From positions 1 through 64,000 of the IMG/VR virus record IMGVR_UViG_3300046170_000519: 64,000 nucleotides of DNA, one strand, 5' to 3'. This document shows positions 12,807 to 56,182 of this stretch, in pieces (within the stretch, counting starts at the first letter, position 1; each line of letters begins with the position of its first letter). The position numbers were made by a program, and so were the translations under genes. The notes beneath the pieces were generated by a model, which worked only from the letters and a program-made list of their open reading frames with translations, made no database searches and was not told where the DNA came from.

Positions 12807-13382
12807 TTATCTTGTAATGTATCGGTATTTATCGTAATCATTATTTAATTCTAATAAATCGATATCATCACTAATCTTTAACATACAGAGCGAGTCTACA
12901 CTCTTAACTATACTAAAATATTTTTTTTCCAAAGTTAATTCAGATAAATACCTTTTAGCATCATGTATTAATACGATTGGGTCTACCCCCATATCTTTAG
13001 AGTATTTTATTGTGGCTAGAGCGCAAGCTATTCTAAACCTTCCATCTATTAATACAACCTCTGGTATATCTTCTGCATTGTTTATCGCTTGACTGTATGT
13101 AGGCCACAAATTTTTTCTTGCCTCATCGGTGGGGTAGCCATACGAATGGGTGGGCCCTAAATCAATATGCTCAAACTTGAATCTTTTTTCATCTTGAATT
13201 ATTTTTTCAACTTTATCCAACCATTTTCTATCAGTATCTATTGTGCGAACCTTTGCCGAAGAATTGTCGTATACAAAAACCGTACTACCTCCACATCCGT
13301 ATTCAAAGTAAGTATTAATGCTTTTTGTCGTTTCTAAAAGAAATTCAATTTCTTTTTCGTTCATTCCAACTTTCAATCGCAT
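12807..13382 (-). CDS. Class I SAM-dependent methyltransferase-like protein (191 aa)
   Basis: Motif I FEYGCGGST, acidic TIDTD, VLIDGRFR and VLIHD motifs, as in small-molecule/glycan O-methyltransferases. Confidence 0.65.
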   Translation of the reverse strand: MRLKVGMNEKEIEFLLETTKSINTYFEYGCGGSTVFVYDNSSAKVRTIDTDRKWLDKVEKIIQDEKRFKFEHIDLGPTHSYGYPTDEARKNLWPTYSQAINNAEDIPEVVLIDGRFRIACALATIKYSKDMGVDPIVLIHDAKRYLSELTLEKKYFSIVKSVDSLCMLKISDDIDLLELNNDYDKYRYITR

Positions 13383-13467
13383 TTTATTTTTTTTCTTTTG
13401 AGTTTTTTTGAGCTTTTTAAAGACTTTTCATCAGGGTAATCTTTATCTCCAGGTTTAGCTGGTTTGT
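13379..13467. repeat. Direct repeat copy A (89 bp)
   Basis: Identical to 14156-14246 except T5 vs T7 in one homopolymer; includes the start codon of the methyltransferase gene. Confidence 0.95.
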
Positions 13468-13484
13468 TAAAGGTTCTCTATGTC

Positions 13485-14159
13485 TCATACTATATCTATG
13501 TTAAAAATATTTCTCATATATTCATTAATCTCATCATTCTTAATGACATCTTTCCATTTATTTGGATTTGACTTTGCAATTGAATGATATCTACCATTAA
13601 CCTCATTAATATTCAGACTACCACCCGTGAATGATGATCCCTTGCCAATACCAGAGTTTGGCAACCCAGTAGGTACTACTTTATGTGACCAACCAAATCT
13701 ATTTTCTACCTTCATTGCATAATCACTATCTGAAACTAATTTATTATATAAAATGAACTTATTAGGGTATTTATCATATAACATACAATACTTTAAATAT
13801 ATTTCATCACACTTACCACCCCAACAAGTATCTCTATTCGATTTTATCCTAGATGCCCATATATTATACCAATCTCTAAGGATAATAATATCATTATCTA
13901 AAATATGTGTAGGTGCGACATCCTCATACGAGGAAATTAAAACATCATATTTCCCATCTGGTGGTTTCTTTAACTCAATTTTACCACCCAACCAAGTAAC
14001 ATGTTGCCCTACTTTACCATTTGTAATTGCATTTTTATGATAACCATATTCAAAATGCGAAAGTATCCATTCTATGATCATGTGATTACCTGATCTCCTC
14101 AATCCATATGTATTATACTCCACCATCTTAATAAACCCCTCTCCAACTTTCAATGGCAT
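13485..14159 (-). CDS. Sulfotransferase-like P-loop protein (224 aa)
   Basis: 5'-PSB-like YGLRRSGNH and 3'-PB-like IIILRDWYNIWAS motifs. Confidence 0.6.
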   Translation of the reverse strand: MPLKVGEGFIKMVEYNTYGLRRSGNHMIIEWILSHFEYGYHKNAITNGKVGQHVTWLGGKIELKKPPDGKYDVLISSYEDVAPTHILDNDIIILRDWYNIWASRIKSNRDTCWGGKCDEIYLKYCMLYDKYPNKFILYNKLVSDSDYAMKVENRFGWSHKVVPTGLPNSGIGKGSSFTGGSLNINEVNGRYHSIAKSNPNKWKDVIKNDEINEYMRNIFNIDIV

Positions 14160-14246
14160 TTTATTTTTTTTCTTTTGAGTTTTTTTGAGCTTTTTTTAAA
14201 GACTTTTCATCAGGGTAATCTTTATCTCCAGGTTTAGCTGGTTTGT
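14156..14246. repeat. Direct repeat copy B (91 bp)
   Basis: Covers the 3' end of ORF 14161-14745 and the ATG of the sulfotransferase-like gene. Confidence 0.95.
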
Positions 14247-14745
14247 AGTTTTTCCCCATCCTTTTTTTCTTTCTTCTAATGTTTTCCCAGAGTCCAGGTT
14301 TATTTTTCTTACCTTCTGATTCGTCCATTTCATCGAGTAAAATATCTTCAAGATCTTGTTCTGTAAATTCCTCTAAAGAACCTTCAACTTTTGAACCTCC
14401 TCGCCATTGCCTGCAAGACCAGTATCTAGCTTTCCATTTTGGCCCAGGGTTTCCGCAGTTATGCCTAGCTCTAAAAGATTTTCTTCTTGCAGGATCATCT
14501 CTTTTAATTTCCATGTTTGGATCTCCGAAGTTCACTTTTACAATATTCCCTTTGTCATTCTTTACATAAACAGAAAATTTCTTAGGCCCCTTTGGAGTTC
14601 TGAATGGCTTATTTAAAGTTTTACCTTTATTCTTTTCTTCAGCCCATATTTCCTCAGAAATCAATTCTTCACTTCCACAATCAGGACAGAATAAACTTTT
14701 AGCATTTATTATTTCAGAAAGATCTATATTTATATATTTTCTCAT
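14161..14745 (-). CDS. Basic Cys/His-motif protein, probably virion-associated (194 aa)
   Basis: Motifs KPFRTPKGPKKFSVYVKN...RKSFRARHNC...ARYWSCRQW and GLWENIRRKKKR; between portal and protease. Confidence 0.7.
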   Translation of the reverse strand: MRKYINIDLSEIINAKSLFCPDCGSEELISEEIWAEEKNKGKTLNKPFRTPKGPKKFSVYVKNDKGNIVKVNFGDPNMEIKRDDPARRKSFRARHNCGNPGPKWKARYWSCRQWRGGSKVEGSLEEFTEQDLEDILLDEMDESEGKKNKPGLWENIRRKKKRMGKNYKPAKPGDKDYPDEKSLKKAQKNSKEKK

Positions 14746-14753
14746 ATTTTATA

Positions 14754-16823
14754 CTACACAGGTTTTTCTCTGCTGTGAAAAAGAATTGCTGACGGGTAAT
14801 CAGATAATTGATGCTTGGCTGATATTTCTAGTATTTCTTGAAGGCTGGTTAACTTGTCAATACTTTCTGGGTCTTTTACGCACGCTTTTATGCTTTCCTC
14901 CCAATCTTCACTTAAGTTGGATACAACAACAGACTCTATTAACTTGTCTAAAATATTGTTTTGATCTTTACTTAATCTTTTAACTTTAAATTTTGATTTT
15001 AATTCTGACAAACCTAAAGATCTTAGTTTTTCTATTGATTGAATGGTAGACTGAATATCTTTCCTTGAATATAGTTGGTTGGCTGTAGCACCCGTTGGTC
15101 TTCCAACTTCTTTCGGTGGGTTATTTTTTTGCTGTTGATCTGTTTTAATCACTTGTTTTTGGTTGGCGGATTTATTAATCTGTTTTTCCTTGAGGTCTCT
15201 CTCTTCTTCAGCTCCAGGAGCTTCAACCAAAGGCACTCCCCCAATTAAGGGATTGTACATACCTTTCTCTCTGTCATCTAAGTATTTTTCTTGAGCTGGC
15301 TCTAATTCATCTGCATGAGGGAAAATACCTGTCCTTATCGCCTGCATACCTTGCTCTGGAGAGAGTACTCCTATTTCCAGAAGTCGTGTTATAACTCTTT
15401 GAAATTGAACTTCGTCTTTAATATCCACTTCTTGAAATTTCACTGTTGGGTATTGTTTAAATCCCATTTTTCGAGAAAGTATTTTTACTTGAGGCATGAT
15501 AAAATCATTAATAAAAGCGTTTCTCGCTTCTTTCAATCTTTCCAAGAAAATTTGAGCTTTAATTTGTGTGCTAGAATAATTTTCTTTACCTACAATAATA
15601 TTTTGCAATCCTTCTCTAATGTCTTGATTTACTATTTCGTATTTATTAGGCCCTAGTATTTTGTTCACATCAGGCATTACGAAATCAGCTTTTGTCGTGT
15701 AGTCGCTAACTAATACTCGACCAACACTTTCATTTTGAAACAAGCACTGCATAGCACTTAAACTATGGGGGTTAATTCCACCTTTATCTGGTTCCGTCCC
15801 CATTGTAATTAACAGTACAACATTTTCTATTGTTCGACTTATAGCCTGATCAATTTTTTTAAGTTCTATTTTCCAGTTCAGATCATCTAACACTGGAAAT
15901 CCAAAAGGGATTGCAAAAGGTTCATAATCTTGTTTTTTATAAAATGAAAAAATTAATTTTTCTGAATCTAATGGCACAAGTATTCCTGTGGTATTGAACT
16001 GCCCTTTTTTAATTGCTTTTTGAGTTTCTAAATCAAAAGAGTTGAATATATCTTGATCTTCTTTTGTGGCGGGATTTCTTAATCTTTCTAACTCATATTC
16101 TGATAATATTTTTTTATAAGCCCCAGAGTCAAAAGATGTTGCTCTGTTTGCTGTTATATCGTATGGATTCAATAATATATATCTAACAGGTATTTTACCA
16201 TCCTCTAAAAACTTATTTCCTTCAGCTCCATAGACTTTATTTAGATTTAACAGATCTTTTTTATTAAACTCTCCATCTATTCGATAAAAAAATATATTCC
16301 CACTTCTATAGTACTCTCTAAAATATTGATCCTTTAATTTCCATAGATTAATTTTTTCAAACCATTTATATATAAACTTTCTTGCAGTTTCACTGCCACC
16401 TTCTAAGTATATTTCAGAATTTGAAAACTCTGACATAACATCGATAGCGTTTCGGAATATTGGTATATTCGCATAAGCTTTTTGGCATAACTCTATAGTT
16501 TCCCTTACATCAATACCATCAACACTTACATTATAAGGTAGTATACCTTCAGATATATTTTTAAATTTATCCGCTTTAATTCTTGAGCCTAATCTCCCTC
16601 TAGATTTACTGCTTGAATCTGCTGATCGAAGAGCATCTGTTATTGGCCCGCCACAACTAGCTTTTGATTCGAACAGCTGAGGTTTTGTTTTACTTGAAGC
16701 TTCGCTAACATAATAATTATCTCCACACATTATAGGCTCAAAAGAACTTTGCTCCTGTGCGACATCTTTTTTTTCAAATCTATTCCAGTAGCTTGATTTT
16801 TTTGTATATTTTCTTTTACTCAT
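14754..16823 (-). CDS. Portal protein (689 aa)
   Basis: Directly after the large terminase; helical core (AYANIPIFRNAIDVMSEF, FYKKQDYEPFAIPFGFPVL). Confidence 0.8.
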   Translation of the reverse strand: MSKRKYTKKSSYWNRFEKKDVAQEQSSFEPIMCGDNYYVSEASSKTKPQLFESKASCGGPITDALRSADSSSKSRGRLGSRIKADKFKNISEGILPYNVSVDGIDVRETIELCQKAYANIPIFRNAIDVMSEFSNSEIYLEGGSETARKFIYKWFEKINLWKLKDQYFREYYRSGNIFFYRIDGEFNKKDLLNLNKVYGAEGNKFLEDGKIPVRYILLNPYDITANRATSFDSGAYKKILSEYELERLRNPATKEDQDIFNSFDLETQKAIKKGQFNTTGILVPLDSEKLIFSFYKKQDYEPFAIPFGFPVLDDLNWKIELKKIDQAISRTIENVVLLITMGTEPDKGGINPHSLSAMQCLFQNESVGRVLVSDYTTKADFVMPDVNKILGPNKYEIVNQDIREGLQNIIVGKENYSSTQIKAQIFLERLKEARNAFINDFIMPQVKILSRKMGFKQYPTVKFQEVDIKDEVQFQRVITRLLEIGVLSPEQGMQAIRTGIFPHADELEPAQEKYLDDREKGMYNPLIGGVPLVEAPGAEEERDLKEKQINKSANQKQVIKTDQQQKNNPPKEVGRPTGATANQLYSRKDIQSTIQSIEKLRSLGLSELKSKFKVKRLSKDQNNILDKLIESVVVSNLSEDWEESIKACVKDPESIDKLTSLQEILEISAKHQLSDYPSAILFHSREKPV

Positions 16824-16874
16824 GGCTGGGTTACTTTATGATTACACGCAAAAGTTTAAAAGTGACTTTTAAAG

Positions 16875-18731
16875 TTACTTTATAAACATTGGGGCAAAAG
16901 TTAAATGATTTTCTTGTTTATAGTTTTTGATGTCATGGTATATTTTAACCATCCAACTACCTAAAACTAAAGCAGAATAACAGTCTTTCCTCGCTTTACT
17001 TGGCCCAGTAGTCTTTTTTAAATTTAATGGCAAATCAAATGTTTGAGTTCCTTGTGGAGATGATCTCACTTCAATCAAAGCGCATTGCCCTTTAGTATAT
17101 GATATCATATCATTTTGATGTTCTATAAAATCAATCATTTTAGCCCCATCTGTTTGGCTAATTTCATCATCATTAAAATTCATAAATCTCAGTTTTTGAA
17201 TCGGGATTTGCTTTCTTCTCTGGGATTGAAAATGTTCATTTATACTTCTTGATGCGAACCAAACTCTTTTATGGTCAAAATTTGCTTGAAGCAATTCGTT
17301 GGCTCTTCGGATCCAATCTGATGTAGGCTTCCTTAAGCAGCAAGGTATTCCTTCGTTAGAAAACTCTCTTTTAGCTTTTGATAGTGATTTTTGGTAATTT
17401 TCTATATCATCAAATTCTGTTTCAATAATATTGATTTTATGTTTTGAGTTTTTGAATTCAATATTTTCTTGTAGAGCGTTAATAAATTGTACACCACCAT
17501 TATAATCGCCTACAATAGCTTTTATATTAAAATTATTTAATATATAATTAAAATATTGTATATGATTTTTTAAACTTTCTCCAGCCATTGCATAAACATG
17601 AACTAATGTACAAGTATTTTTTTCTGGATGTAATTTAAATACCTGCATGGCAAAGTCATCAGAGCTTTCTGATTCAGCCCAACTTGGGTCAAATGCCAAT
17701 AAATATTTAGCACCTTCTTCTCCTTTCACCTCGACACTCGGATGACTACCTTCTTCTACGGTGCAAGCTTTCATTGTTGAAATCTTAAAATAGCCTGAGC
17801 TATCATCAGTAAAAATTGCACCAAATTCTCGATCATATTGACTTTGACTCATGGTTGACTTCGCTTGTTCTACCAAATTCTGATCATATAGTTGTTTTGG
17901 AGCGCAGTCATAAGAGAAGTGCATAATAGATCTAGAAGCGTTATCATTTTCATTTTCTTTTAATATAGATTGCTCAAAGTTTTCGTAAAGCTTATATAGA
18001 TACTCAAATTTATAACTTGCAGACGAAAGCATAATTAGCTTATTGTTAGGCCAAACATATCTATCCTCTTCTTTCATTTCTCCGCTAGCTATTAGCTTTG
18101 TTTCAAGATTGTACATATCTTCTCTTTCTTTTGGATTTTGAACAACAGACAAGAATGGGACGATAACCTCATTATAAACTCTCTCTGGCATAAGTAACAT
18201 CTCATCGATAATAATCCTATGAAACCTAAACCCTCTAAGTTTTGATCCATCTCCCAAAGGTAATGCTCGAATAGAGCTGTCGCCTATTTCCATAACCCAT
18301 TCATCATTTTGCTTGGAAACTCTTGTAATACAATTTGATAAATATTTGGCTTCTGGTTTAGCAGCGATATCTTCAATTTTTTTAAAAATCATTTTTGCTT
18401 GTCGAAATGATTTAGAAAGTATACCAATATCTACCCCTTGATTCATTATTGCATCCATGAAGGCAAAAATTCCAGTAGTCCAGGATTTTGACATACCACG
18501 AGACCATATACCCAAAAAGTAATCGCTCTCAAACATTGCTTTTATAGCCATATGTTGAAATGGAAACAAATCCACCCCTGCAATTAAATTAGTACTGAAA
18601 GTTACATTCTCTTTCAAAAATTTATACAACAATATCTTAGCTTCCCTTTCTTCTAGAAAACCTTGTTTAGATTTTAGGATATCATTGATATCCTCTTTCT
18701 TTTTCTTTTTGTGTGGTTGCTCCCAAGCCAT
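16875..18731 (-). CDS. terL: Terminase large subunit (618 aa)
   Basis: Walker A-like WSRGMSKS, Walker B IIIDE, LRGFR motif, RNase H-like LAFDPS nuclease domain, C-terminal KDCYSAL. Confidence 0.92.
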   Translation of the reverse strand: MAWEQPHKKKKKEDINDILKSKQGFLEEREAKILLYKFLKENVTFSTNLIAGVDLFPFQHMAIKAMFESDYFLGIWSRGMSKSWTTGIFAFMDAIMNQGVDIGILSKSFRQAKMIFKKIEDIAAKPEAKYLSNCITRVSKQNDEWVMEIGDSSIRALPLGDGSKLRGFRFHRIIIDEMLLMPERVYNEVIVPFLSVVQNPKEREDMYNLETKLIASGEMKEEDRYVWPNNKLIMLSSASYKFEYLYKLYENFEQSILKENENDNASRSIMHFSYDCAPKQLYDQNLVEQAKSTMSQSQYDREFGAIFTDDSSGYFKISTMKACTVEEGSHPSVEVKGEEGAKYLLAFDPSWAESESSDDFAMQVFKLHPEKNTCTLVHVYAMAGESLKNHIQYFNYILNNFNIKAIVGDYNGGVQFINALQENIEFKNSKHKINIIETEFDDIENYQKSLSKAKREFSNEGIPCCLRKPTSDWIRRANELLQANFDHKRVWFASRSINEHFQSQRRKQIPIQKLRFMNFNDDEISQTDGAKMIDFIEHQNDMISYTKGQCALIEVRSSPQGTQTFDLPLNLKKTTGPSKARKDCYSALVLGSWMVKIYHDIKNYKQENHLTFAPMFIK

Positions 18732-19172
18732 TTAAATTATTTGTTGTATTGCTTCTTGTGATATTCCAGATGGAGTATGAATTGTTTTTATACCAACTTC
18801 ATTAGCATCGTCAATAATTGTTTGAAGATCATCTATTAATAATATGTTTTTATATTCACAATTAAACTTTTTTTTAGTTTCTTCTATGTGATATCTTTTA
18901 GATGGATAAGAGGGATGAATTACGATAATATCAAAAAATTTTTTTTCAAAGATATATGATAAATAATTTTTACAGATCTCTGCAGCTGGACTTGCTGAAG
19001 CTATTCCTACTTTATAACCTTTATTCTTTAAAGATTTGATTACATCTACAGCATTCGGCATCAACATGCTTTCAACTTGTTGTTTTGATAAAATCTTTGA
19101 AGCCCAACTGTCAAATCTCCATATAGTTCTATCTAGATCTATTAATACTATTTTTATTTCTTTTGTGTTCAT
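18732..19172 (-). CDS. HAD-superfamily phosphatase, MDP-1-like (146 aa)
   Basis: Motif I DLDRTIW, motif II IAS, K in motif III, motif IV LIDD. Confidence 0.75.
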   Translation of the reverse strand: MNTKEIKIVLIDLDRTIWRFDSWASKILSKQQVESMLMPNAVDVIKSLKNKGYKVGIASASPAAEICKNYLSYIFEKKFFDIIVIHPSYPSKRYHIEETKKKFNCEYKNILLIDDLQTIIDDANEVGIKTIHTPSGISQEAIQQII

Positions 19173-20098
19173 ATTTTTAAAATTCTTTTATCTATATAGT
19201 ATTGTATGTCGCAGTGCCACATTTCAGGTCCATATTCAAGAAGTATTGGAATTAGGTTTTCGGATCTTTTTCGCCCCCCTGAAAATATAAACTGACAACT
19301 TCTAGGGAACTCATGAGATAATACTCTCATTTGATGCCATACAAAAGTTAAATTTGATTTATGCGGAGAAAAGGAATTATTTCTAATAATTTTTTCAATA
19401 GAACTTTCCACAACAATATATAAAAATGAGTCGAAAGCTACAGCTCTTTCAAGTTCTTTTTTAAATCTTTCAAACCCTACAGTCATAGTAGATTTAAAAT
19501 CTGTTTCACTTTTCCTGTCAATGTATGTATGTTTATAATCCTCTCCTGATGCCGTGTAGTCTCCAAAGTCTAATTTTTGAAGTCTAGAATTAGGGAACTT
19601 TAATGGAGTTTGCTCTCTAGTGTCAATCAATATCTCTATGTCATTTAAATTTTTATTTTCTTTTAAAAATTTACTTTTAATAATTTTATTTAATAATGGC
19701 TCCACTTGGAGCCTCCTACAGGCTTCGCTGTAGGATTTAAAATATAATTTATATATTTCTATTTCAGGTAAATTAAGTAATTTTAATTCTAAATGATTTG
19801 GCGCGTATTGCAAATTTTTGCTAATTATTCTTTTTTGTAATATATCTAATAATATTTGTTGAACATGTTCATGGTCAGCTGTCGCTGCCCATTTTTCTAA
19901 TTCAACATTATTCGAAAAATAAGTAGAAAAATATTGATCTTTATTTTTAAAAGGAATTAATTCATTAGTATATAAATTATATCTAGGATAATATGTTGTA
20001 TAATATTCAGAAAGCAAAATTCCATGAGCTTTTATATGAGTGTGGAGAGAACGCTCACTTTTAAATTTTGACCCGCATATTTTACATGTTATACTCAA
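19169..20098 (-). CDS. C2H2 zinc finger + ERCC4 (XPF/Mus81-type) nuclease (309 aa)
   Basis: N-terminal CKICGSKFKSERSLHTHIKAH; ERCC4 signature IDTREQ...GDY...IDRKS..DF. Confidence 0.8.
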   Translation of the reverse strand: MSITCKICGSKFKSERSLHTHIKAHGILLSEYYTTYYPRYNLYTNELIPFKNKDQYFSTYFSNNVELEKWAATADHEHVQQILLDILQKRIISKNLQYAPNHLELKLLNLPEIEIYKLYFKSYSEACRRLQVEPLLNKIIKSKFLKENKNLNDIEILIDTREQTPLKFPNSRLQKLDFGDYTASGEDYKHTYIDRKSETDFKSTMTVGFERFKKELERAVAFDSFLYIVVESSIEKIIRNNSFSPHKSNLTFVWHQMRVLSHEFPRSCQFIFSGGRKRSENLIPILLEYGPEMWHCDIQYYIDKRILKI

Positions 20099-22989: not shown

Positions 22990-23015
22990 ACATACATTAT
23001 AATATGTACATATGT

Positions 23016-29118: not shown

Positions 29119-29119
29119 C

Positions 29120-30216: not shown

Positions 30217-30942
30217 TTAATGAGCTAAATATGCAATACCTTTTTTGCATCCTTTGATAAAACATAAGTTGCAATTATGAGCTTTACAAGTTGCAAGAAC
30301 CTTGCCGTCTTCGCCCTTAACATAAGTTGCGGGGCAAACAAAATGACCATCTTGCTCGGCTTGCTCTTTTGAGCTATAGACGGAAGTTCCCGCATCTAGA
30401 CCATCGATTTGTGGAGCGGGTTCATCAACATACAAGGCACTTGGTTTTAAGCATACATTCTTTAAACTTGCGAGCTTGCGAAGTGAAGGTAATTGACTAT
30501 CCCTTGCCCACTCACGAGTTGGAAACCAAAAGCGAATGGTGGGAAAGTTTTCGCAAATCTTAATCCACGCCTCAATATACTTTGGGGAAAACAAGTCGCC
30601 TGAATCATGAACGCGAAAAAGATCTGTGTTGACATTCTTTAAAACTTTTTTGTTGCCTTGCTTGTCAAAATACTTTGCGGTAATTTGCTTGGATATCTCA
30701 TTTACAAAAGTTTGCCCATTGTCTCGATGCAAAGACTTGGTGACAAAATTTGCCTTGTCTTGCAAACTTTGTTTAACATTGTTAAACATATAAAAACCTT
30801 TGCAAGCATAACAAGCATCACAAATAAACTTTTTTGCTTTGTCTTTGACTTTTGCCATAAGTTGAGCTGCTGGGCAATACTTGAAAGCGGGAATGTTAAA
30901 GCCTAAGCAAGGCATTTTAGAAGGATTTGATAGTAAGTTCAT
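30217..30942 (-). CDS. Gp88-like phage protein (241 aa)
   Basis: SKMP...CP...CDACYA and FRVHDSGDLF...FWFPTR motifs; leaderless promoter TTGCAT-17-TAGTTT-6-ATG. Confidence 0.65.
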   Translation of the reverse strand: MNLLSNPSKMPCLGFNIPAFKYCPAAQLMAKVKDKAKKFICDACYACKGFYMFNNVKQSLQDKANFVTKSLHRDNGQTFVNEISKQITAKYFDKQGNKKVLKNVNTDLFRVHDSGDLFSPKYIEAWIKICENFPTIRFWFPTREWARDSQLPSLRKLASLKNVCLKPSALYVDEPAPQIDGLDAGTSVYSSKEQAEQDGHFVCPATYVKGEDGKVLATCKAHNCNLCFIKGCKKGIAYLAH

Positions 30943-35364: not shown

Positions 35365-36057
35365 TTACCTTTTGTCAACTATTAAATGGTTTCTATCAAA
35401 TATAATTGTATTTTCATCGATTAGTTTTTTATACTTTATTTCCTTTTTAAAATCTTCGAGTAATAAAAATTTGTAACCTAATTTAGATTCTTCTTTTGTT
35501 CTGTAAGCATGATATTCACTTTCCACTATAGGCAAGCTTCTGCACATCAATGCTTCATAAAATCTGAAACTCCAAGTAGCATCACCTGCTGGACACAGGC
35601 AGTATTTACTTTGACACATTATTTGAAGATATTCTTTATCATTTTCTAAGGGGTTGTATCTTAAATTTTGCAAATCTTTAGTGAGGGTGCGATTATTTCT
35701 AGGGTTATATCCTTTACCCGAATTTGTATAATCAAATGAACCTAAACTTTTCCAATTAGGTTCATCATCTGTATTTAAAAAATACGATTTGTTTGTAAAA
35801 TTTTTTTTTGCAAATTCTATAACCCACTGTCTGTTATTTTTAATTCCTTTTGAATTTATTGTCCCCATAAAGCAATAGTCATAAATCTTTTTTCTTGGCA
35901 ATTTGTGGACTTGTTGGTAAAATCTCTTCGAGAATTTAGCTATCGGAGGGTTTGCAACCACATTTTCAGGATTTAACCCCTCTTCCCTTAAAGCTTCTTC
36001 CATCTGATATTTAAACTCTAAATATCCAGAACCTCCTTGAAATTTGCTAGGACTCAT
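35365..36057 (-). CDS. Exostosin-like (GT47) glycosyltransferase (230 aa)
   Basis: MCQSKYCLCPAGD..WSFRFYEAL.C..LPIV signature. Confidence 0.75.
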   Translation of the reverse strand: MSPSKFQGGSGYLEFKYQMEEALREEGLNPENVVANPPIAKFSKRFYQQVHKLPRKKIYDYCFMGTINSKGIKNNRQWVIEFAKKNFTNKSYFLNTDDEPNWKSLGSFDYTNSGKGYNPRNNRTLTKDLQNLRYNPLENDKEYLQIMCQSKYCLCPAGDATWSFRFYEALMCRSLPIVESEYHAYRTKEESKLGYKFLLLEDFKKEIKYKKLIDENTIIFDRNHLIVDKR

Positions 36058-45703: not shown

Positions 45704-45837
45704 AGTTTAAATATTTGCATGGAGAGTATCCATGACTAACTCCGATATAGTAGTAATCGAATTACTTTCTAGTCTTTTTTAGTTGATCAGACAGGGTAGT
45801 TCCGTAGGAATAGGATCAGAAAGAGGTGAACCCAAAA

Positions 45838-45912
45838 TGGACGCATGGATCAGAATCGAACTGACGAATGGGAGTTTTGCAGACTCCTGCCTTACCACTT
45901 GGCTACCATGCG
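45838..45912 (-). tRNA. trnC: tRNA-Cys (GCA)
   Basis: Cloverleaf: acceptor CGCATGG/CCATGCG, U73 plus encoded CCA, D-arm GCC-AAGTGGTAA-GGC, anticodon arm GGAGT-CTGCAAA-ACTCC, T-arm GTCAG-TTCGATT-CTGAT. Confidence 0.95.
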
Positions 45913-45942
45913 AATTAAATTGTTTTGTATTAATATTTGATG

Positions 45943-47007: not shown

Positions 47008-47038
47008 ATCATTATCCTAATATAAGTTTTAAATTGTG

Positions 47039-47542
47039 TCAAGCACTAAATATTTCATTTACTAATTCCGCTGTTACACGATCTATCTTTTTTTGTTTCT
47101 CGCTAATGAATAAACCAACATGACATTTTGGACAAGAGTAAGATACATTTTTTTTCAACCTATGCCTTTTAAAAGTTAACCCACAACAAGTGTCGATATA
47201 TTTATAGTGGTTGTTTGGATGATTTAATTTTGCCTTTGTGCAAGCCCTTGGTTCTGCACCAATTTCTCTACAAATTGATTTCCAAATTTTACCATGACCA
47301 ATGCCTTTTCGACCATATCTTTCATAAGATAAAGCATGAGCAATTTCATGTAAAATTGTATCTTTTACCTGTGATTGATCATTTAATTCTGTATACCATT
47401 TCGCTAAATAAATTATTTTTTTAACATAACTGCAAGTACCAAGTGAGCGTTTTTTATTATGCCAACGAAATTTCCAATGCCCAAGTAAACCATGCTTGTG
47501 CATTAATATGTGAGTAAGTGCTTGTGCTTTTTTAAGTTCCAT
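47039..47542 (-). CDS. SprT-like zinc metalloprotease (start revised to MELKKAQ)
   Basis: TILHEIAH...GHG..WK motif and C-terminal Cys ribbon; TTGACA-17-TATTGT-6-ATG. Confidence 0.88.
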   Translation of the reverse strand: MELKKAQALTHILMHKHGLLGHWKFRWHNKKRSLGTCSYVKKIIYLAKWYTELNDQSQVKDTILHEIAHALSYERYGRKGIGHGKIWKSICREIGAEPRACTKAKLNHPNNHYKYIDTCCGLTFKRHRLKKNVSYSCPKCHVGLFISEKQKKIDRVTAELVNEIFSA

Positions 47543-47687
47543 AATGAGACAATAAAACACGAATTATGCAATGTCAAGTTTTTAATCAGAATCTATGCTT
47601 AAAATGATTAATATAAATAAAGAAACCAAAACACAACCAATTAAAATATTAAGAGCATAAAAAACATCGGGTAAACTTTCTAATAAT

Positions 47688-50421: not shown

Positions 50422-50438
50422 TATTTTTCTACCTCTGT

Positions 50439-51684
50439 TCAGTTTCTTGATTTAATTGACCTAACAATACATTTTGCTCCATGTTCATTATCTGTCATTA
50501 ATGCCTCACCATTTATAAGCATTATTTTATACATCATTTTCCCCATGTGCATCCTCTCTTTAACATAAATGACTTGCTTCGGATTTATGTGATACTTTTC
50601 TTGATTTGCGTCTTCTATTTGAATCATAATTTTATTCAGTTATGTTCTCCATCAATGTTTTTATACAAGTCATCTTGAAACTTTTCTACTTTTTGATTAT
50701 GGAGAGCATCATCCCAACCTTTTGCATAACCTTCGTTAAATTTGTCGTTTTTAAGATGACCTTGCATATTATCATTTTTTTCTTCTTCCGTGAACCATGT
50801 ATATTCCACATTGAATACATCATCTACATTACTAGGATGAAATCCTGCACATACAAGTAAACCTTTAAACATTTCTACCGCCTCATCGACGCTTGTGGAG
50901 TCGAAACCGAATTCATCTTCCACGCTAAATACTTTATTATTTGTTGTAATTGATATTTTCATGATTTATATACATCTTTCCATATTTTACCATCTTTGTC
51001 AAGTTTAGAACTTAAAATCATTATTTTTTTATAGCAGGGGTACAAAAAACTAAAACAATTAAAATATAAAAATTTACTAATAAAGTTCCCGAAATAAAAT
51101 AACACTTTAGAAAGCAAAATTATCATAAATCTTTATTTAAGTTGTCAAGTTCTGCTTGTTTTAAGTTTTCGTCAAGCAAATGGTCTAGCAAATGAACAAT
51201 GCCCCAACCCATTTCTTGATCAAGTAATCCATAAATACCTTCACCTTTATCATCATGCCATAAAATTGATAGCAAATGATTTCTTTGTTCTTCTAGTAAT
51301 TTGTAATCAATGTTCATTTTTAACTTTACTGCCCCACTCTAATGGTTCGTCATCATTTAAATCGCAAGCAATTTGCACATTAGTAATATTATGCCATGCT
51401 TGTTCAGCAAAGACACTACCATCCTTATTGCGACTTGGTCTTTTAAATCTTTTATTGCAATTATTTTGGATATGCCTGTCGATAATTTCAATATCATCAG
51501 CAATACAAGATAAACGATGTCTAAGTTCAAAATTTTCTTTCATTAATCTTTCGATATTTTGCTTGTTAATCTCATGCTCTACTTCCGTCATGTAAGCATA
51601 AGCTGAATCTTTTTTTTGTTCAGCTAAACTCATGTTTACAGATTCTTCGTAAGTTGGATAATCGTCTCCTATAATTTCTTTCAT
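50439..51684 (-). CDS. Hypothetical genes 50439-50627, 50636-50962, 51123-51317, 51307-51684
   Basis: ORF track; co-oriented. Confidence 0.6.
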
Positions 51685-51698
51685 GTCTATACCTTATA

Positions 51699-52562
51699 TT
51701 AGTCAATTGATGTTGTCAACTCTTTTTTAAAGAAAAAATCAAAACCTAACTTTTCATTAAATTCTTTCAATGATTCTTCATCTAATATGTCATTTAAATA
51801 AGAAATGAAATTATCACCTTTATCTTCGATTAAAGATTTGATATTTTTTATGTTATTTATATTTGCTAAAGCCTCTGATTGAAGATTAGCTTGCCCTTGA
51901 CTAAATTCACCTTCTTGTTTGAAATGAAGACCAACTTGAGTTATTGCGTCAATGTAATACATAATCCAATCCCATACTTCAGATGTTGCAAACATAAGTT
52001 CTACATTTTCTTCGTCAAAAGAATCGACATTCACAGGATTAGGTTTTTTTTTATTAACTAAACGATGAAATTGAAGACTTAATTTAGCTTTTTCTTTAAT
52101 TATATTAAAATCAAAATCTCTTATACCTATTTCTATAACTTTTAAGTTCCAAAAATTTCCTCTTTGCCCTTTTGGGGGATAAGAACCCAACATATTCCAA
52201 TATCCTGCACCATTTTCATTTAAATATTGCTCTAATGATCGTCTTGAATTCTTCATCCAATTAAAAAAATCTTCAGCAGTAGCATTTGATACATTAGGAG
52301 CATCATTATGGCAATCTCTGCATAATAATAATAGATTACTAGGTTCATCTTTTCCCTCTTGAGAATGTGGAATTATATGACATCTTTGAATATTTTTTGT
52401 CGTTCCACATCTCCAACACCTACCCCCATCTACATCTAAATCAGCTTGATCTATTGCCATTCCAACCTCGTCACCATTTGCATATTTTGGCGAATTCATC
52501 CAATATTCTATAATGTCTTTTATAGATGTTTTAATAGAACCTCTTTTCTTTTTCATGCTCAT
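51699..52562 (-). CDS. HNH endonuclease (287 aa)
   Basis: CWRCG...HIIPHSQEG....NLLLLCRDCH. Confidence 0.88.
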   Translation of the reverse strand: MSMKKKRGSIKTSIKDIIEYWMNSPKYANGDEVGMAIDQADLDVDGGRCWRCGTTKNIQRCHIIPHSQEGKDEPSNLLLLCRDCHNDAPNVSNATAEDFFNWMKNSRRSLEQYLNENGAGYWNMLGSYPPKGQRGNFWNLKVIEIGIRDFDFNIIKEKAKLSLQFHRLVNKKKPNPVNVDSFDEENVELMFATSEVWDWIMYYIDAITQVGLHFKQEGEFSQGQANLQSEALANINNIKNIKSLIEDKGDNFISYLNDILDEESLKEFNEKLGFDFFFKKELTTSID

Positions 52563-52747
52563 CCCTTATGTGAATTATTTATTATTGTCAAGCGTTTATT
52601 TTTTCGGTGGAAATCTACCATAGTTTCCCATGCCATCGTAATCCATGAAGTCGCCATTAACTTCACTCATTATTTTATCCATTTTCTTTTTAGATGAACG
52701 AGTATCTTTTCTGCGATAAAACCAATTAATTATTGTGCGAATCATTT

Positions 52748-55508
52748 TCATCTTTTTGCTTCCACTTGTTCTTGCGTCATTTCGCCTCTAATAAATGCAC
52801 CAAAATCATCATTATTTAAATGAGATGTATCGGGTGGAGCAACACCAAACTCTCCACCTATACCTAAAAGTTTTGCTCTGTCATTAAGTCTCTTGTTCAT
52901 CTCCTCTTTTAATTGAAACATTTTTTCCACAAGGTCTTCAATGAGAGGATAACCCGCCAACTCAAAAAGGCGAGTATCTAATCCACTTTCAACTTCAAAC
53001 AAACTATCTATTTTTTGTGCTTCTTCGTATTTATTCATATCTTTACCTTATAAGTCTTGGTTTAATTTGTCAAGCTCCGAATCATCTTTAGGCTTTTCTC
53101 TCTCTTCTATAAAACTAACTTCAGCATTTTGTCTCCATGCTTTGCTTACTTCATAATCAGCATCCATCTCATTAAAAGCTTTAATAACTGCATCATCTTC
53201 CGATTCCGAATCAACAAGATAAGTGCGATAAGTTGTGCTTGCTATTTCTATTTCAAATGTTTTCATAGCTAAAATACTATTATAGCTATTCTAATTTGTC
53301 AAGTATATTTTTAAACTCTTCATAAGTTATAGCTTCGCTTTTTTCAAAGTCTTCACATGGCTTTGCGAATTTTATTTTGCCAAGTTTTAATATTTTTTCC
53401 TCATTAATTTCACACGGAAAGAAATAATTAAAATGTTTTTTTACATCTTTAAGCATTAATTGCAAAGATTCAAGTAAATCTTCGGGGCTTTCACCTATTA
53501 TTTCGGGTTTTTCAGAATGAGCAAAAATTTCTCCATCGTCATTATACATAACTTCATAAAGACCATAGCCATTTTCGTCTTTAATTATTCTGTAATTCCA
53601 CATTAGTTATTCCTCATACATATAAATTGGAGTGTATTCGCCAACATAAGCGCCTTCAATATTAAAATGGAAAAAATCTCTTGCGTCTTCTTCACTCATG
53701 CCTTCATTTATTAATCCCCCTATGATTTGGTCAGTAGAATAAACAACTCTGCCATCGCTAGAATAACCCATAATTGCATGATCATGCCCATCTGCGAGCA
53801 ATGCTTCGGGGTTGAATTCACGAATGTTTTCTTTTAATTGCTCTACTCGTTCAGATCGAATTTTTCTAATTTTATCTATTGTGTCCATATTTTTATTTTT
53901 ATTATCATTACAAACGCAATTCTCATCTTTACAAGCCATATCAAGAATAATTTTCTAACAACCAATTTAAATATATTTTTAATTCATAAAAAAACCTATC
54001 AGAATTATTCTGCTCAAACCAAAAAGAAAGATTTTCAATTAAATCACCCATTCTGTTGGAAACCCTTTGTAATTCTTCAACTGAAAGATTTCCATTATTA
54101 AGCATATCTTCAATGATAAGTATGTTTGCATCAACAATAGACTTTATATGTTCCTCATTCATGAACTTCTCCTACATAATCTCCATTTGATAAAATAATA
54201 TCTTCAACTATTTGCATTGTTTCATTTTGAACAAAAGGCTCTAGTTTGTCAAGTAATTTATTAGCAATCATTTCTTGAGCAGATTCGGATTGCAAATTAA
54301 TTTGACAAGTACCTGTGTTGGCACAAGCTATTTCCTTTAAAGTATTAAGTATTATCTCTTTCATTGTTTATAGGTATTTCAAGGGATTTAACAAATTGAT
54401 TCAATGTCTCTAACCTGCTTTCGGCATCATCTAATAATGATAGAGATTCTTCCGCATTTTTATAAAAATCAGTAGTTGAATGATCTCCAATACCAATTGG
54501 TATTTCCCCTAATAATTTCAAACTTAATTTTGCTTTAGCTATATCAGCTTCCGCTGAAGTTTTTAACATATTATATAATTCTTTATTCATTACCTGTTAG
54601 TATATACTATATTTGAAAGCAAATCAAGAGAAAAAACACCCCTAATGCTCCAAATAGAACTTTTATTTCGTTAATTTTATTTTTCAATTTTTTTTCTACA
54701 CTCCCAATTTGATTTTGCCATTTCTCTTTGCCTTCTAAGTTCATTGCCTTGATTTTTTAATATTGCAATAGCTTTGTTTTCATTCATGTCACCATAAAGA
54801 ACTTTTTGAACGCAAACTTGCACTTCTCTTGCGGTAACTCGATAGGGGAAGTTTCTGTAAAGAAACTTATAAAACTTGCCACTTATTTTGCCGTGCTTTA
54901 ATTTTTTGTGCAAAAATCTTCTGTAATTGCAATTTTTAGTATTATGTAAGGTTTTCATGTTGCGGAAGTATAATATACAAAATATCATACAGAGAGTCAA
55001 GACTTTCTTTTACCTTTATTGTCATACTTACGTTTCCAAAACCTTCCACACTCTCTCAAGGACGAATTAGCTTCTCTAATGTACTCAAGAGTGTCATTTA
55101 CTAATTGTATTTGAGAATCTATTGTTTCTGATTTAGATTTATTTTTTATTTGTTCAAGAACTTCTTGAATGAAATTTATATATGGACACGTATCGGGCGG
55201 TACTTCGGGTTCTCTTTTGTTTGGAAAAAGAGGATTCATTTTTTTATCGGTTGTATTTCCATCCAATATTCCGCTGAATTATCTTTTGAGGGATTTAAAC
55301 CGCAAATAAAATAACCATCTTTTTTGGAATAAAAAACCAAAAGAGAGTTATTTGGTGGAGACTCTTCTTCTGTGGAGCGCCAAAAATAATTAAATTTAAA
55401 ATCTTTGATGATGGAATTATACTTTTTAGAAAGATTTTCTTGAGCGTCGGAATAACCTTTTGAGTAACCTCTTCCAAAGAAAATATCTTCAGACATTTGC
55501 TCAATCAT
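52748..55508 (-). CDS. Cluster of small hypothetical genes (52748-53038, 53048-53266, 53286-53603, 53607-53939, 53941-54162, 54155-54364, 54345-54590, 54677-~54958, 54997-55266, 55236-55508)
   Basis: ORF track; packed co-oriented genes. Confidence 0.6.
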
Positions 55509-56182
55509 AAATTATCATCCATATCAAAAAGATTTTCAAAATTAAAGATTTCAAAATCTTTACTTAGCAGTTTTCTTAAATGTTTTTTAGCCTCTTTGGA
55601 GAAATTAACAGAAGATTTTTTTGTTTTTGTTGTGTTAACCTTCTTCTGTTCCAAATTAATTGGATAACCTAACTCATTAGATATTTTAGCTAAATCTTCT
55701 TGAAGGGTTTTCATTGTTAAGATTCTGTCAACAATCAGATTATCCTTATCATCACAAACAAAAATATGTTGATGAATTGGATTGTAATTAGAGTCTCTTC
55801 TTTTGTTTAAAGGGAAAGAATACTTTGAATAAAAAGTACCATTTTGAAAACCCCAATGATGGGGGCAATCAGCTAAAATCCAATTATTAAAGTTTAAAAT
55901 AGTATAAGGTTTAGCCCCTAATTCTTTATGATAAAGATACCAACTCTTTGCTCTTTCGTAAGGATCACGTATAACACAAAACTTTAAGGAGTTGTCAAAA
56001 TGCACTCCATACCTCTCCTTCATTACAGAAGCTCTGCAATGATTATCTGATATGAAATTTTGCTCTAAAACTTGAGCGATAACTTTTTGTGAGTTTCCAT
56101 CTACTAATGCACAATTTAACATTCTTTGAATAGTTCTTGAGGCATTTTTTGGAATACTAATGAATAGACCTTTTTTTTTCAT
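55505..56182 (-). CDS. Sulfotransferase family 2 protein (225 aa)
   Basis: FISIPKNASRTI (5'-PSB) and FCVIRDPYERAKSWY (3'-PB) motifs. Confidence 0.85.
   Translation of the reverse strand: MKKKGLFISIPKNASRTIQRMLNCALVDGNSQKVIAQVLEQNFISDNHCRASVMKERYGVHFDNSLKFCVIRDPYERAKSWYLYHKELGAKPYTILNFNNWILADCPHHWGFQNGTFYSKYSFPLNKRRDSNYNPIHQHIFVCDDKDNLIVDRILTMKTLQEDLAKISNELGYPINLEQKKVNTTKTKKSSVNFSKEAKKHLRKLLSKDFEIFNFENLFDMDDNL

What the first reader, a model, noticed from the sequence alone, without database searches (positions are those of the whole stretch)
12807..56182. Dispersed glycan-tailoring set (GT47, two sulfotransferases, O-methyltransferase) alongside a Thr-rich virion protein
Seen: a methyltransferase (12807-13382) and a sulfotransferase-like gene (13485-14159) in the late head operon, an exostosin-like GT47 (35365-36057) and a family-2 sulfotransferase (55505-56182). 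Established: GT47, sulfotransferases and O-methyltransferases build and decorate polysaccharides, and phage-encoded virion glycosylation is known in some mycobacteriophages. Inference: the phage may put sulfated/methylated glycans on its virion, with the Thr/Ser stalk as an obvious acceptor, or remodel the host surface. A PAPS donor would have to come from the host.
Basis: inference. Interest (0 to 1): 0.62.

Follow-up and report, generated by a model that had tools for sequence, protein, structure and literature searches.

The report
Marine jumbo phage sulfated-glycan toolkit
A 206-kb marine phage really does carry sulfotransferase, methyltransferase and glycosyltransferase genes, as part of a much larger sugar-building toolkit, next to long threonine-repeat fibre proteins that they may decorate; no experiment has tested this.

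Summary
All four ORFs exist at the stated coordinates and are the stated kinds of enzyme. 35365-36057 is a short GT47/RXYLT1_C-like protein and 55505-56182 a Sulfotransfer_2; both pass Pfam's curated cut-offs. 12807-13382 is a class-I SAM methyltransferase of the 3CVO/Methyltransf_24 type. 13485-14159 is a divergent sulfotransferase with intact PAPS-binding motifs, from a large family with no Pfam model.

The set is bigger than reported. The 205,857-bp genome holds 5 sulfotransferase-fold genes, 5 glycosyltransferases, another methyltransferase, a UDP-sugar dehydrogenase and 3 epimerase/dehydratases. None has a membrane segment.

The Thr-rich protein (5800-8757) is a conserved 170-aa adaptor-like domain, then 37 tandem 30-nt repeats with Thr at every second residue, then a Cys-rich end domain. 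About 29 kb more of such (TX)n proteins lie outside the window.

Only one clade has (TX)n tracts. In it, every locus with the relevant DNA held has a sulfotransferase gene inside the virion module; about 50 shorter-adaptor loci have none. That is one evolutionary co-gain plus one replacement.

GT and sulfotransferase sets also occur in relatives without (TX)n tracts, so the dispersed genes are not tied to the stalk. Virion glycan tailoring is my best reading (about 0.4). Host-surface remodelling is a serious rival.

The parts
12807..13382 (-). P0001, a 191-aa class-I SAM-dependent methyltransferase (3CVO / Methyltransf_24-like). Motif I reads EYGCGGST and a DGRFR motif is invariant. The substrate is unknown.
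   Evidence: It is present next to the terminase only in three near-identical contigs and absent from 77 relatives.
13485..14159 (-). P0002, a 224-aa divergent PAPS-type sulfotransferase fold from a large family without a Pfam model. RRSGN matches the 5'-PSB motif. RD..N...S matches the 3'-PB motif, with R-to-S spacing of +8 as in SULT and TPST enzymes. An invariant SYED Glu and a GSSF motif are also present.
   Evidence: It starts 1 nt after the upstream gene ends.
35365..36057 (-). P0003, a 230-aa short GT47 / RXYLT1_C-like glycosyltransferase with no membrane anchor. It stands alone among small accessory ORFs.
   Evidence: The closest homologues (46-56% identity) lie mostly in marine giant-virus contigs.
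55505..56182 (-). P0004, a 225-aa Sulfotransfer_2 with intact 5'-PSB (IPKNASRT) and 3'-PB (RDPYERAKS) motifs and no membrane anchor.
5800..8757 (-). P0005, a 985-aa virion appendage protein. A conserved adaptor-like N-domain of about 170 aa (about 8248-8757) is followed by the (TX)n stalk and a Cys-rich C-domain of about 380 aa with 29 Cys (about 5800-6940). There is no signal peptide.
   Evidence: In most relatives the N-domain alone is the whole 150-220-aa protein.
6970..8076 (-). Tandem repeat of 30 nt x 36.9 copies encoding TNTETQTETI / TNTETQTDTS, with Thr at every second residue. This is the proposed O-glycan or sulfate acceptor. A near-identical contig has 50 aa fewer.
   Evidence: The plus-strand 'ORF' 6868-8229 is an antisense shadow of the Thr codons.
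14161..14745 (-). 194-aa Zn-ribbon-like gene directly upstream of P0002. It marks one edge of the lineage-specific insertion.
11187..12782 (-). 531-aa conserved head-module gene directly downstream of P0001. It marks the other edge of the insertion.
9251..10471 (-). 406-aa probable major capsid protein, inferred from position, conservation and the highest RNA-library contig depth. It has no family hit.
14754..18731 (-). Portal-sized 689-aa gene (14754-16823, assignment inferred) and the large terminase (16875-18731).
   Evidence: phrog_2, E 1e-23.
1361..2528 (-). The junction between genes 2181-2528 and 1361-2173. At this spot the sister lineages carry a Sulfotransfer_2 gene inside the virion module. 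It is empty here (7-nt gap).

Best explanation
The four ORFs are genuine enzymes. They belong to a large, soluble, phage-encoded toolkit for making and tailoring sulfated, and possibly methylated, glycans in the infected cell's cytoplasm.

Proposed mechanism (inferred):
1. Phage nucleotide-sugar enzymes (a UDP-sugar dehydrogenase and three epimerase/dehydratases) supply uronic-acid or deoxy-sugar donors.
2. GT2, Fringe-like and GT47-like transferases O-glycosylate phage-made proteins before lysis.
3. The dense Thr-every-second-residue stalks are the acceptors. These are the adaptor appendage at 5800-8757 and about 29 kb of similar proteins at roughly 144-173 kb of the genome.
4. Sulfotransferases using PAPS that is largely or wholly host-made, and SAM methyltransferases, then cap the glycans. 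Some may sulfate Thr directly.
5. The pair in the head module (13485-14159 and 12807-13382) is made with the virion proteins and acts on the adaptor stalk. The result is a polyanionic, mucin-like brush on fibres at the head-tail junction.

Shown: the enzyme families, their motifs, the lack of membrane anchors, the anatomy of the stalk, and the clade-level co-occurrence.

Inferred: the acceptor, the order of steps, and the virion location.
For: - Enzyme identities.
- Toolkit beyond the window. A plus-strand cassette at 75.8-82.6 kb holds GT2, three Sulfotransfer_2 genes (one found only by profile iteration) and a Fringe-like GT. A second cassette at 64.8-69.6 kb holds a GT47-like gene, a GT2 and a Methyltransf_11. 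A UDP-Glc/GDP-Man dehydrogenase and three epimerase/dehydratases lie at 172.9-181 kb, directly abutting the (TX)n block.
- No hydrophobic segment in any enzyme and no signal peptide on the (TX)n proteins, so both stay in the cytoplasm until lysis.
- Among 80 adaptor loci, Thr-rich extension occurs only in one clade, and the MCP tree needs a single change (SH-aLRT 88). All four non-window members with enough DNA carry Sulfotransfer_2 3.65 kb downstream, inside the virion module. The window lineage instead carries P0002 and P0001 4.7 kb upstream. About 50 short-adaptor loci with enough DNA have none of the three families within 10 kb.
- Runs of 12 or more (TX) units occur in all 4 contigs of that clade, at two or more loci in G001 and G016. 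They occur in 0 of 11 other relatives, including two complete 147-kb genomes. Reversed-pattern controls give 0.
- Repeat units differ between lineages but keep Thr at every second position. What is conserved is the Thr spacing, not a particular sequence.
- A P0002 homologue also lies 5.6 kb from the gp23-type capsid gene of an unrelated T4-like phage, beside a weak GT25 hit.
- Contigs from four metatranscriptome libraries cover P0001 and P0002 at depths similar to the portal-sized gene. The capsid-sized gene is about 20-fold deeper, which even DNA carry-over would not give.
- Precedent: giant-virus fibril-glycan clusters with a sulfotransferase and an APS kinase (PMC10117803). Homologues of P0001, P0002 and P0003 occur in giant-virus contigs.
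Against: - No direct observation of any modification.
- The co-occurrence amounts to one gain plus one replacement, so it could be hitch-hiking.
- Relatives without any (TX)n tract carry GT2, GT47 and Sulfotransfer_2 sets: G004, G019, and G034:C4 with 5-6 sulfotransferase genes. Those enzymes must have another acceptor there.
- P0003 and P0004 sit in the early/accessory region, not with virion genes.
- No glycosyltransferase lies in the head module itself.
- There is no GT1/GT4 enzyme of the kind that primes the bacterial Ser-repeat glycoproteins.
- Strict TXTX periodicity could equally mark an unmodified beta-rich or spacer structure.
- The virion location of the adaptor-like domain rests on gene order and a weak SU10_adaptor lead of 0.87; no PDB sequence matches it.
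- The length of the (TX)n block may be mis-assembled from short reads.
- The RNA evidence is from contigs only and does not prove transcription.
Confidence: 0.4

Rival explanations
1. Host-surface remodelling. The toolkit acts on lipid-linked or nucleotide-activated precursors of the host's own envelope polysaccharide (LPS, capsule or EPS). This changes the infected cell's surface, for example to block superinfection or to stop progeny from sticking to debris. On this reading the Thr-rich stalk is just a flexible spacer.
For: - GT, sulfotransferase and nucleotide-sugar sets occur in relatives with no (TX)n tract.
- PHROG files the Sulfotransfer_2 family under 'moron, auxiliary metabolic gene and host takeover'.
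- The GT2 resembles bacterial teichuronic-acid and colanic-acid transferases, though far below their cut-offs.
- P0003 and P0004 lie among early/accessory genes, and the main cassette is on the opposite strand to most genes.
Against: - None of the candidate ORFs checked has a membrane segment, and no flippase, polymerase or initiating transferase was among the genes scanned; most of the genome's about 233 ORFs were never scanned against a family library.
- It does not explain why a sulfotransferase gene sits inside the virion module only in the clade with (TX)n proteins.
- The host is unknown, so a sulfated host polymer cannot be checked.
Confidence: 0.3
2. No common pathway. The genes are independent accessory 'morons' with unrelated substrates (small molecules, RNA, proteins). 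Their shared glycan flavour comes from broad family names. The (TX)n tracts are unmodified structural repeats.
For: - The four window genes are up to 43 kb apart.
- The substrate of P0001 is unknown, and its structural neighbours include RNA and catechol methyltransferases.
- The fold neighbours of P0002 include small-molecule and tyrosyl-protein sulfotransferases.
- The genomic contexts of P0001 homologues are uninformative.
Against: - About 17 glycan-type genes are in one genome, many in two tight cassettes that mix GTs with sulfotransferases.
- Nucleotide-sugar genes abut the (TX)n block.
- Similar mixed cassettes recur in relatives.
Confidence: 0.12
3. DNA hypermodification. The transferases glycosylate (and further tailor) modified bases in phage DNA to evade restriction.
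For: - Phage glycosyltransferases often do this (the literature cited in PMC12619734).
- A C5 cytosine methylase lies next to the main cassette.
Against: - There is no thymidylate-synthase-like hydroxymethylase anywhere in the genome.
- From my own knowledge, GT47, Fringe-like and Sulfotransfer_2 families are not known to act on DNA.
- It does not explain the link to (TX)n proteins.
Confidence: 0.03

Closest known systems
Mycobacteriophage virion glycosylation (Freeman et al. 2023, as cited in PMC12619734)
   Same: Phage-encoded transferases that modify the phage's own virion proteins in the cytoplasm before lysis.
   Different: There, glycosyltransferases sit beside the capsid and tail genes, and glycans are attached at the C-termini of the capsid and tail-tube subunits; this was shown experimentally. 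Here the head module holds a sulfotransferase and a methyltransferase but no glycosyltransferase. The proposed acceptor is a repeat stalk, sulfation is added, and nothing is shown experimentally.
Fibril glycosylation clusters of Megavirinae giant viruses (PMC10117803)
   Same: Virus-encoded nucleotide-sugar enzymes, many GTs, sugar methyltransferases and, in B-clade viruses, a sulfotransferase with a SAT/APS kinase, proposed to decorate virion fibrils. Homologues of P0001, P0002 and P0003 occur in giant-virus contigs.
   Different: Those are eukaryote-infecting viruses with one compact cluster. This is a tailed phage with dispersed genes plus cassettes, five sulfotransferases, no full SAT/APS kinase, and dipeptide-repeat acceptors.
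Serine-rich repeat glycoproteins of Gram-positive bacteria (Fap1, GspB; from my own knowledge)
   Same: Very long (SX)n dipeptide-repeat stalks that carry a terminal binding domain. They are O-glycosylated in the cytoplasm by soluble transferases and form surface fibrils.
   Different: The repeats here use Thr instead of Ser. There is no GtfA/GtfB-type GT4 priming pair and no accessory Sec export. The system is phage-encoded and adds sulfotransferases.
Phage auxiliary sulfotransferase genes (PHROG 3347; a sulfotransferase annotated in Synechococcus phage S-SCSM1)
   Same: Sulfotransfer_2-type genes already occur in marine phage genomes.
   Different: Elsewhere they are single, uncharacterised accessory genes. 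Here there are five copies, one of a new family, with one placed inside the virion module of a clade that has (TX)n proteins.

Membership tests
PAPS-dependent sulfotransferase superfamily (P0002, 13485-14159) | Sulfotransferase alpha/beta fold over the whole domain | tested here: met
   The AF2 model has pLDDT 86.6. The top 21 of 48,161 chains are all sulfotransferases, Z 10.9-6.6, with 170-200 of 224 residues aligned. Foldseek alone is weak (E about 1e-2).
PAPS-dependent sulfotransferase superfamily (P0002) | 5'-phosphosulfate-binding loop and 3'-phosphate-binding R...S motif | tested here: met
   RRSGN is invariant, as in TPST's RSGTT. R95, D96 and S103 are invariant or nearly so in 72 sequences, with R-to-S spacing of +8. 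The profile aligns this motif to RNPKDTAVS of SULT7A1 at E 1.3e-3.
PAPS-dependent sulfotransferase superfamily (P0002) | Match to a curated sulfotransferase family model | tested here: not met
   No Pfam, PHROG or NCBIfam hit for P0002 or its 8 closest homologues. It belongs to an unnamed family of at least 2,730 clusters.
PAPS-dependent sulfotransferase superfamily (P0002, P0004) | Sulfuryl transfer from PAPS to an acceptor | not testable with these tools
   Needs an enzyme assay.
Pfam Sulfotransfer_2 (P0004, 55505-56182) | Full-length profile match above the curated cut-off, with PAPS-binding motifs | tested here: met
   41 bits against a cut-off of 22, profile positions 12-251 of 252. IPKNASRT and RDPYERAKS are present.
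Pfam Sulfotransfer_2 (P0004) | Type-II membrane anchor of the eukaryotic Golgi members | tested here: not met
   The highest 19-residue hydropathy is 0.73, so there is no membrane segment. The protein is predicted soluble.
GT47 exostosin family (P0003, 35365-36057) | Profile match above the curated cut-off | tested here: met
   42.3 bits against 33.4, plus RXYLT1_C at 36 bits against 27. The whole 177-member family carries both hits.
GT47 exostosin family (P0003) | Complete two-domain GT-B architecture | tested here: inconclusive
   Only profile positions 162-259 of 293 are matched. 230 aa is short for a GT-B enzyme but is the family norm.
Class-I SAM methyltransferase (P0001, 12807-13382) | Rossmann-like methyltransferase fold with a glycine-rich motif I | tested here: met
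   PDB 3CVO at E 2.5e-58 by profile and TM 0.81 by fold. E27, G29, G31, S33 and T34 are invariant.
Sugar O-methyltransferase (P0001) | Methylation of a glycan hydroxyl | not testable with these tools
   3CVO has no known function. The next structural neighbours mix sugar (MeT1), catechol, tRNA and rRNA methyltransferases. Genomic contexts are uninformative.
Phage-encoded PAPS supply | ATP sulfurylase (or CysD/CysN) plus APS kinase | tested here: not met
   No ATP-sulfurylase hit above cut-off and no PAPS_reduct/CysD hit. Only an APS-kinase-like N-domain is present: Pfam 42 bits against 21, but far below the NCBIfam equivalog cut-offs. It is fused to a NadM-like nucleotidyltransferase. That fusion is common in phages generally.
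Serine-rich-repeat glycoprotein system | GtfA/GtfB-type GT4 priming glycosyltransferases | tested here: not met
   No Glycos_transf_1 match in the whole genome, while the control rings in 14 of 14 genomes.
Serine-rich-repeat glycoprotein system | Long dipeptide (hydroxy-amino-acid, X)n stalk with a terminal globular domain | tested here: met
   A (TX)n run of 380 aa in P0005, and runs of up to about 1,850 aa elsewhere in the genome. The residue is Thr, not Ser.
Virion glycosylation (any virus) | Glycan detected on a virion protein | not testable with these tools
   Needs purified virions.

The most novel reading that the evidence does not exclude
The phage builds a fucoidan-like, sulfated and methylated deoxy-sugar or uronic-acid glycan brush on very long (TX)n fibres. 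It uses this as bait: it mimics the algal sulfated polysaccharides that its host forages for, so the host's own glycan-capture machinery binds the virion.

The hint for such a host is a phage DUF1501 (sulfatase-like family) gene that is 63-73% identical to genes of marine Opitutales/Puniceicoccaceae. These bacteria specialise in sulfated fucose- and rhamnose-containing polysaccharides (PMC8857213).

A sub-variant is that the head-module sulfotransferase O-sulfates the stalk's Thr residues directly.
Probability: 0.08. Interest if true: 0.9.

Novelty: new variant of a known kind. Interest (0 to 1): 0.66.

Why it matters
Virus-made virion glycans are established for a few mycobacteriophages and for giant viruses. 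Sulfated glycans have not been shown on any phage particle.

This genome pairs an unusually rich sulfotransferase and glycosyltransferase set with roughly 15% of its coding capacity in Thr-every-second-residue proteins. That gives a concrete, testable candidate for mucin-like, polyanionic phage fibres in seawater.

If true, it would bear on three things: how phages stick to marine gels, particles or hosts; phage stability and decay; and sulfur and carbon flow through viral particles.

The work also gives a fold and motif assignment to a large unnamed protein family (at least 2,700 clusters at 50% identity).

Tried and rejected
- **Complex prediction.** P0002 with stalk residues 221-300 of P0005 gave 'no answer' (score 0.00). 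This is no evidence either way.
- **Promoter and terminator scan**, 5000-19500: counts equal the shuffled expectation, so it is uninformative.
- **PHROG and Pfam on the virion-module genes** gave nothing except the terminase. Capsid, portal and adaptor labels are therefore inferences.
- **PDB sequence searches** of the adaptor N-domain profile and of two fusion proteins of the P0002 family gave nothing. The context of fusion protein P0186 was uninformative.
- **Contexts of P0001 homologues** (a planctomycete-like chromosome and a giant virus) do not reveal a substrate.
- **ESM Atlas structure library** was not available.
- **Host search.** 20 kb of the window against 301 Opitutales genomes gave only chance-level short matches. 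The host hint rests on one gene.
- **'Moraphage' lineage** (PMC12619734) was considered as the phage's group. Membership was not tested.
- **P0003 as a truncated gene** was considered and rejected, because 220-240 aa is the family norm.
- **A minimal PAPS synthase** (the APS-kinase-like fusion plus pyrophosphatase) was considered. It is left open because the fusion family is widespread in phages and its C-domain is closest to NMN adenylyltransferases.

Full report
**Setting**

The window is the first 64 kb of a 205,857-bp IMG/VR virus record (CheckV 100%, about 31% GC). It carries a large terminase, rIIA/rIIB, PhoH and a helicase. Its virion genes match no PHROG or Pfam family. No GenBank phage is close; the best terminase identity is about 26%. 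Near-identical DNA occurs in seawater metagenomes of many studies and in six metatranscriptome libraries.

**The four enzymes**

All four ORFs are open on the minus strand at the stated coordinates.

- P0003 (35365-36057) passes Pfam's curated cut-offs for Exostosin_GT47 and RXYLT1_C, but only over profile positions 162-259 of 293. Its 177 detected homologues are nearly all 220-240 aa with the same two hits, so it is not truncated. The two contexts inspected are giant-virus-like.
- P0004 (55505-56182) is a full-length Sulfotransfer_2 that keeps the IPK..S/T and RDPxxRxxS motifs.
- P0001 (12807-13382) has no direct family hit. A 35-sequence profile hits PDB 3CVO at E 2.5e-58. A pLDDT-94 model superposes on 3CVO at TM 0.81, followed by a sugar 1-O-methyltransferase (MeT1), catechol O-methyltransferases and RNA methyltransferases. 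Four homologues hit Methyltransf_24. The fold is settled; the substrate is not.
- P0002 (13485-14159) has no Pfam, PHROG or NCBIfam hit. Its model (pLDDT 86.6) has sulfotransferases as all 21 best matches among 48,161 PDB representatives (Z 10.9-6.6). The family is large: 2,730 clusters at E<=1e-3. A 72-sequence profile aligns its invariant RD..N...S, YN and GSSF motifs to the 3'-phosphate-binding and following motifs of SULT7A1 at E 1.3e-3. An invariant RRSGN loop resembles the 5'-phosphosulfate loop of tyrosylprotein sulfotransferases (that comparison is from my own knowledge).

**The set is larger than reported**

- A plus-strand cassette at 75.8-82.6 kb reads GT2, a 244-aa protein with no family match, Sulfotransfer_2, a 274-aa protein with no family match, Sulfotransfer_2, a fourth Sulfotransfer_2 paralogue (found by profile iteration, motifs intact) and a Fringe-like GT.
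- A second group at 64.8-69.6 kb, just past the window's end, holds a sub-threshold GT47-like gene, a second GT2 and a Methyltransf_11.
- A UDP-Glc/GDP-Man dehydrogenase and three epimerase/dehydratases lie at 172.9-181 kb.
- None of these proteins has a hydrophobic segment.
- The genome has no ATP sulfurylase, no CysD-type gene, no GT1/GT4 and no thymidylate-synthase-like gene.
- A 269-aa fusion of an APS-kinase-like P-loop domain with a NadM-like nucleotidyltransferase sits next to an inorganic pyrophosphatase. This fusion family is common in phages, so a role in PAPS supply is only a possibility.

**The Thr-rich protein**

P0005 (5800-8757) has three parts. The first is a conserved N-domain of about 170 aa. 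In most relatives that domain is the entire 150-220-aa protein encoded just after the capsid-sized gene. A weak SU10_adaptor lead, and a relative family that carries PKD domains on the same N-domain, fit a surface-display adaptor.

The second part is 36.9 copies of a 30-nt repeat encoding Thr at every second residue. The third is a C-domain with 29 Cys. A near-identical contig has five repeat units fewer.

Outside the window, roughly 144-173 kb encodes more such proteins. Three have globular ends (891, 946 and 521 aa). About 20 kb is almost pure (TE/TQ)n and is open in several frames. The Cys-rich plus-strand 'ORFs' there, and 6868-8229 in the window, are antisense shadows of ACA codons. The length of this block should be treated as uncertain until long reads confirm it.

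**Comparative test of the stalk idea**

- Next to the terminase, P0001 and P0002 occur only in three near-identical contigs and in none of 77 relatives.
- Among 80 loci found with the adaptor N-domain, the Thr-rich extension is confined to one clade. The capsid-gene tree needs one change (SH-aLRT 88), and the sister group has a short adaptor.
- In all four non-window members with enough downstream DNA, a Sulfotransfer_2 gene lies 3.65 kb downstream, between homologues of window genes 2181-2528 and 1361-2173.
- The window lineage, sister to one of those four, lacks that gene and has P0002 and P0001 4.7 kb upstream instead.
- About 50 short-adaptor loci with enough DNA have none of these families within 10 kb.
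- A codon pattern for 12 or more (TX) units hits all four contigs of the clade, at more than one locus in two of them. It hits none of 11 other relatives. The reversed control gives zero.
- The repeat units differ by lineage but keep the Thr spacing.

This is a real association. In evolutionary terms it is one co-gain and one non-orthologous replacement.

**Counter-evidence**

- Relatives without (TX)n tracts carry glycan sets. G004 has two GT2 genes, a weak GT47 hit and a sulfotransferase inside a 20-gene plus-strand island. G019 (a complete 147-kb genome) has adjacent GT2 and GT47 genes.
- A 210.8-kb contig binned in a Cellvibrionales MAG is a related phage with 68% nucleotide identity over the core genes. 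It has 5-6 Sulfotransfer_2 genes and no (TX)12 run.
- The dispersed enzymes therefore have, at least in those phages, some other acceptor.

**Expression**

Contigs of four metatranscriptome libraries lie on P0001 and P0002 at depths of about 6-12, like the portal-sized gene. The capsid-sized gene is at 186 and the scaffold and 531-aa genes at 86. This unevenness argues against pure DNA carry-over. Contigs cannot prove transcription or operon structure.

**Reading**

I rank virion tailoring first at about 0.4. The enzymes and the (TX)n proteins are both cytoplasmic until lysis. A sulfotransferase is kept inside the virion module exactly where (TX)n proteins exist. Nucleotide-sugar genes abut the (TX)n block. 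Giant viruses offer a precedent, with sulfotransferase and APS-kinase genes in fibril-glycan clusters (PMC10117803). Bacterial Ser-repeat glycoproteins are the nearest mechanistic analogue for a cytoplasmically glycosylated dipeptide-repeat stalk (from my own knowledge), though their GT4 priming pair is absent here.

Host-surface remodelling is next at about 0.3, because the same kinds of genes occur without (TX)n proteins. Unrelated accessory functions come third at about 0.12, and DNA modification is a minor alternative at about 0.03.

**Host hint**

The phage's DUF1501 gene is 63-73% identical to genes of marine Opitutales/Puniceicoccaceae genomes. These bacteria specialise in sulfated fucose- and rhamnose-containing algal polysaccharides (PMC8857213). 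A search of 301 Opitutales genomes with 20 kb of the window gave only chance-level matches. The host remains unassigned.

**Verdict**

This is a new variant of known virus-encoded glycosylation, worth an experimental test.

Noticed in passing
Outside the window: G000:C1 about 144000-173000, minus strand: A block of about 29 kb of proteins with Thr at every second residue. Three have globular ends (170165-172837, 167329-170166, 165716-167278). About 20 kb is nearly pure (TE/TQ)n, open in several frames and ending in a globular domain near 144.1 kb. Its length may be an assembly artefact. The giant proteins at 130263-142409 (4048 aa, 274 Cys) and 117852-126800 also contain TXTX runs.
   Followed up: partly
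Outside the window: G000:C1 75775-82622 (plus strand; locus L084) and 64786-69603 (minus strand; locus L086): Two glycan cassettes. The first reads GT2, unknown, Sulfotransfer_2, unknown, Sulfotransfer_2, Sulfotransfer_2-like, Fringe-like GT. The second holds a GT47-like gene, a 488-aa ORF, a GT2, a 327-aa ORF and a Methyltransf_11. A C5 cytosine DNA methylase lies at 74285-75376.
   Followed up: partly
Outside the window: G000:C1 172907-181040 (locus L181): Three NAD-dependent epimerase/dehydratases and a UDP-Glc/GDP-Man dehydrogenase flank a class-I ribonucleotide reductase, directly next to the (TX)n block.
   Followed up: partly
Outside the window: G000:C1 98165-101088 (locus L085): A 269-aa fusion of an APS-kinase-like domain with a NadM-like nucleotidyltransferase (GRYQPFHVGH), then an inorganic pyrophosphatase, then a DUF1501 protein. 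The fusion family is widespread in phages and its function is unknown. It could serve PAPS, NAD or nucleotide-sugar supply.
   Followed up: partly
Locus L085:7808-9088 (DUF1501) against loci L186-L217: The phage DUF1501 gene is 63-73% identical to genes of marine Opitutales/Puniceicoccaceae genomes. This is a single-gene hint that the host is a verrucomicrobial degrader of sulfated polysaccharides. No CRISPR-like or prophage match was found in 301 Opitutales genomes.
   Followed up: partly
G034:C4 (locus L185; 210,818-bp contig of a 'Cellvibrionales' MAG): This contig is a related jumbo phage: 68% nucleotide identity over the terminase, portal and capsid genes, and 92% amino-acid identity for DUF1501. 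It was probably binned wrongly into a bacterial MAG. It has 5-6 Sulfotransfer_2 genes and no (TX)12 run.
   Followed up: partly
window 6868-8229 (+): The 453-aa plus-strand ORF is an antisense shadow of the Thr-codon repeat (ACA read as TGT). It should not be annotated as a gene. The same applies to the Cys-rich plus-strand ORFs at G000 149265-158149.
   Followed up: yes
window 5800-8757 against locus L095:10001-12808: Repeat copy number varies between otherwise identical phages (985 aa against 935 aa).
   Followed up: yes
window 13378-14226: Contigs of two RNA libraries join 13378 to 14226 with 7 other letters between, which would remove P0002. The shorter side is only 28 nt, so this may be a related strain or an artefact. 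In locus L005 the gap between P0002 and P0001 is about 575 nt, against 102 nt here.
   Followed up: no
Loci L182, L183, L176 and the unplaced contig of P0009: The closest homologues of P0003, and more distant ones of P0001 and P0002, lie in contigs with giant-virus marker genes (D5 primase, Rpb2, TFIIB, Evr1/Alr, ubiquitin). This suggests gene exchange between marine giant viruses and phages, or a common source.
   Followed up: partly
window 18732-19172, 19169-20098, 30217-30942, 45838-45912, 47039-47560, 58056-58535, 62527-63531: Other annotations met on the way: a HAD/polynucleotide-kinase-like gene, an ERCC4-type nuclease, a GP88 family protein, tRNA-Cys, a SprT-like protease, a weak Macro domain and the UV endonuclease UvdE.
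   Followed up: no
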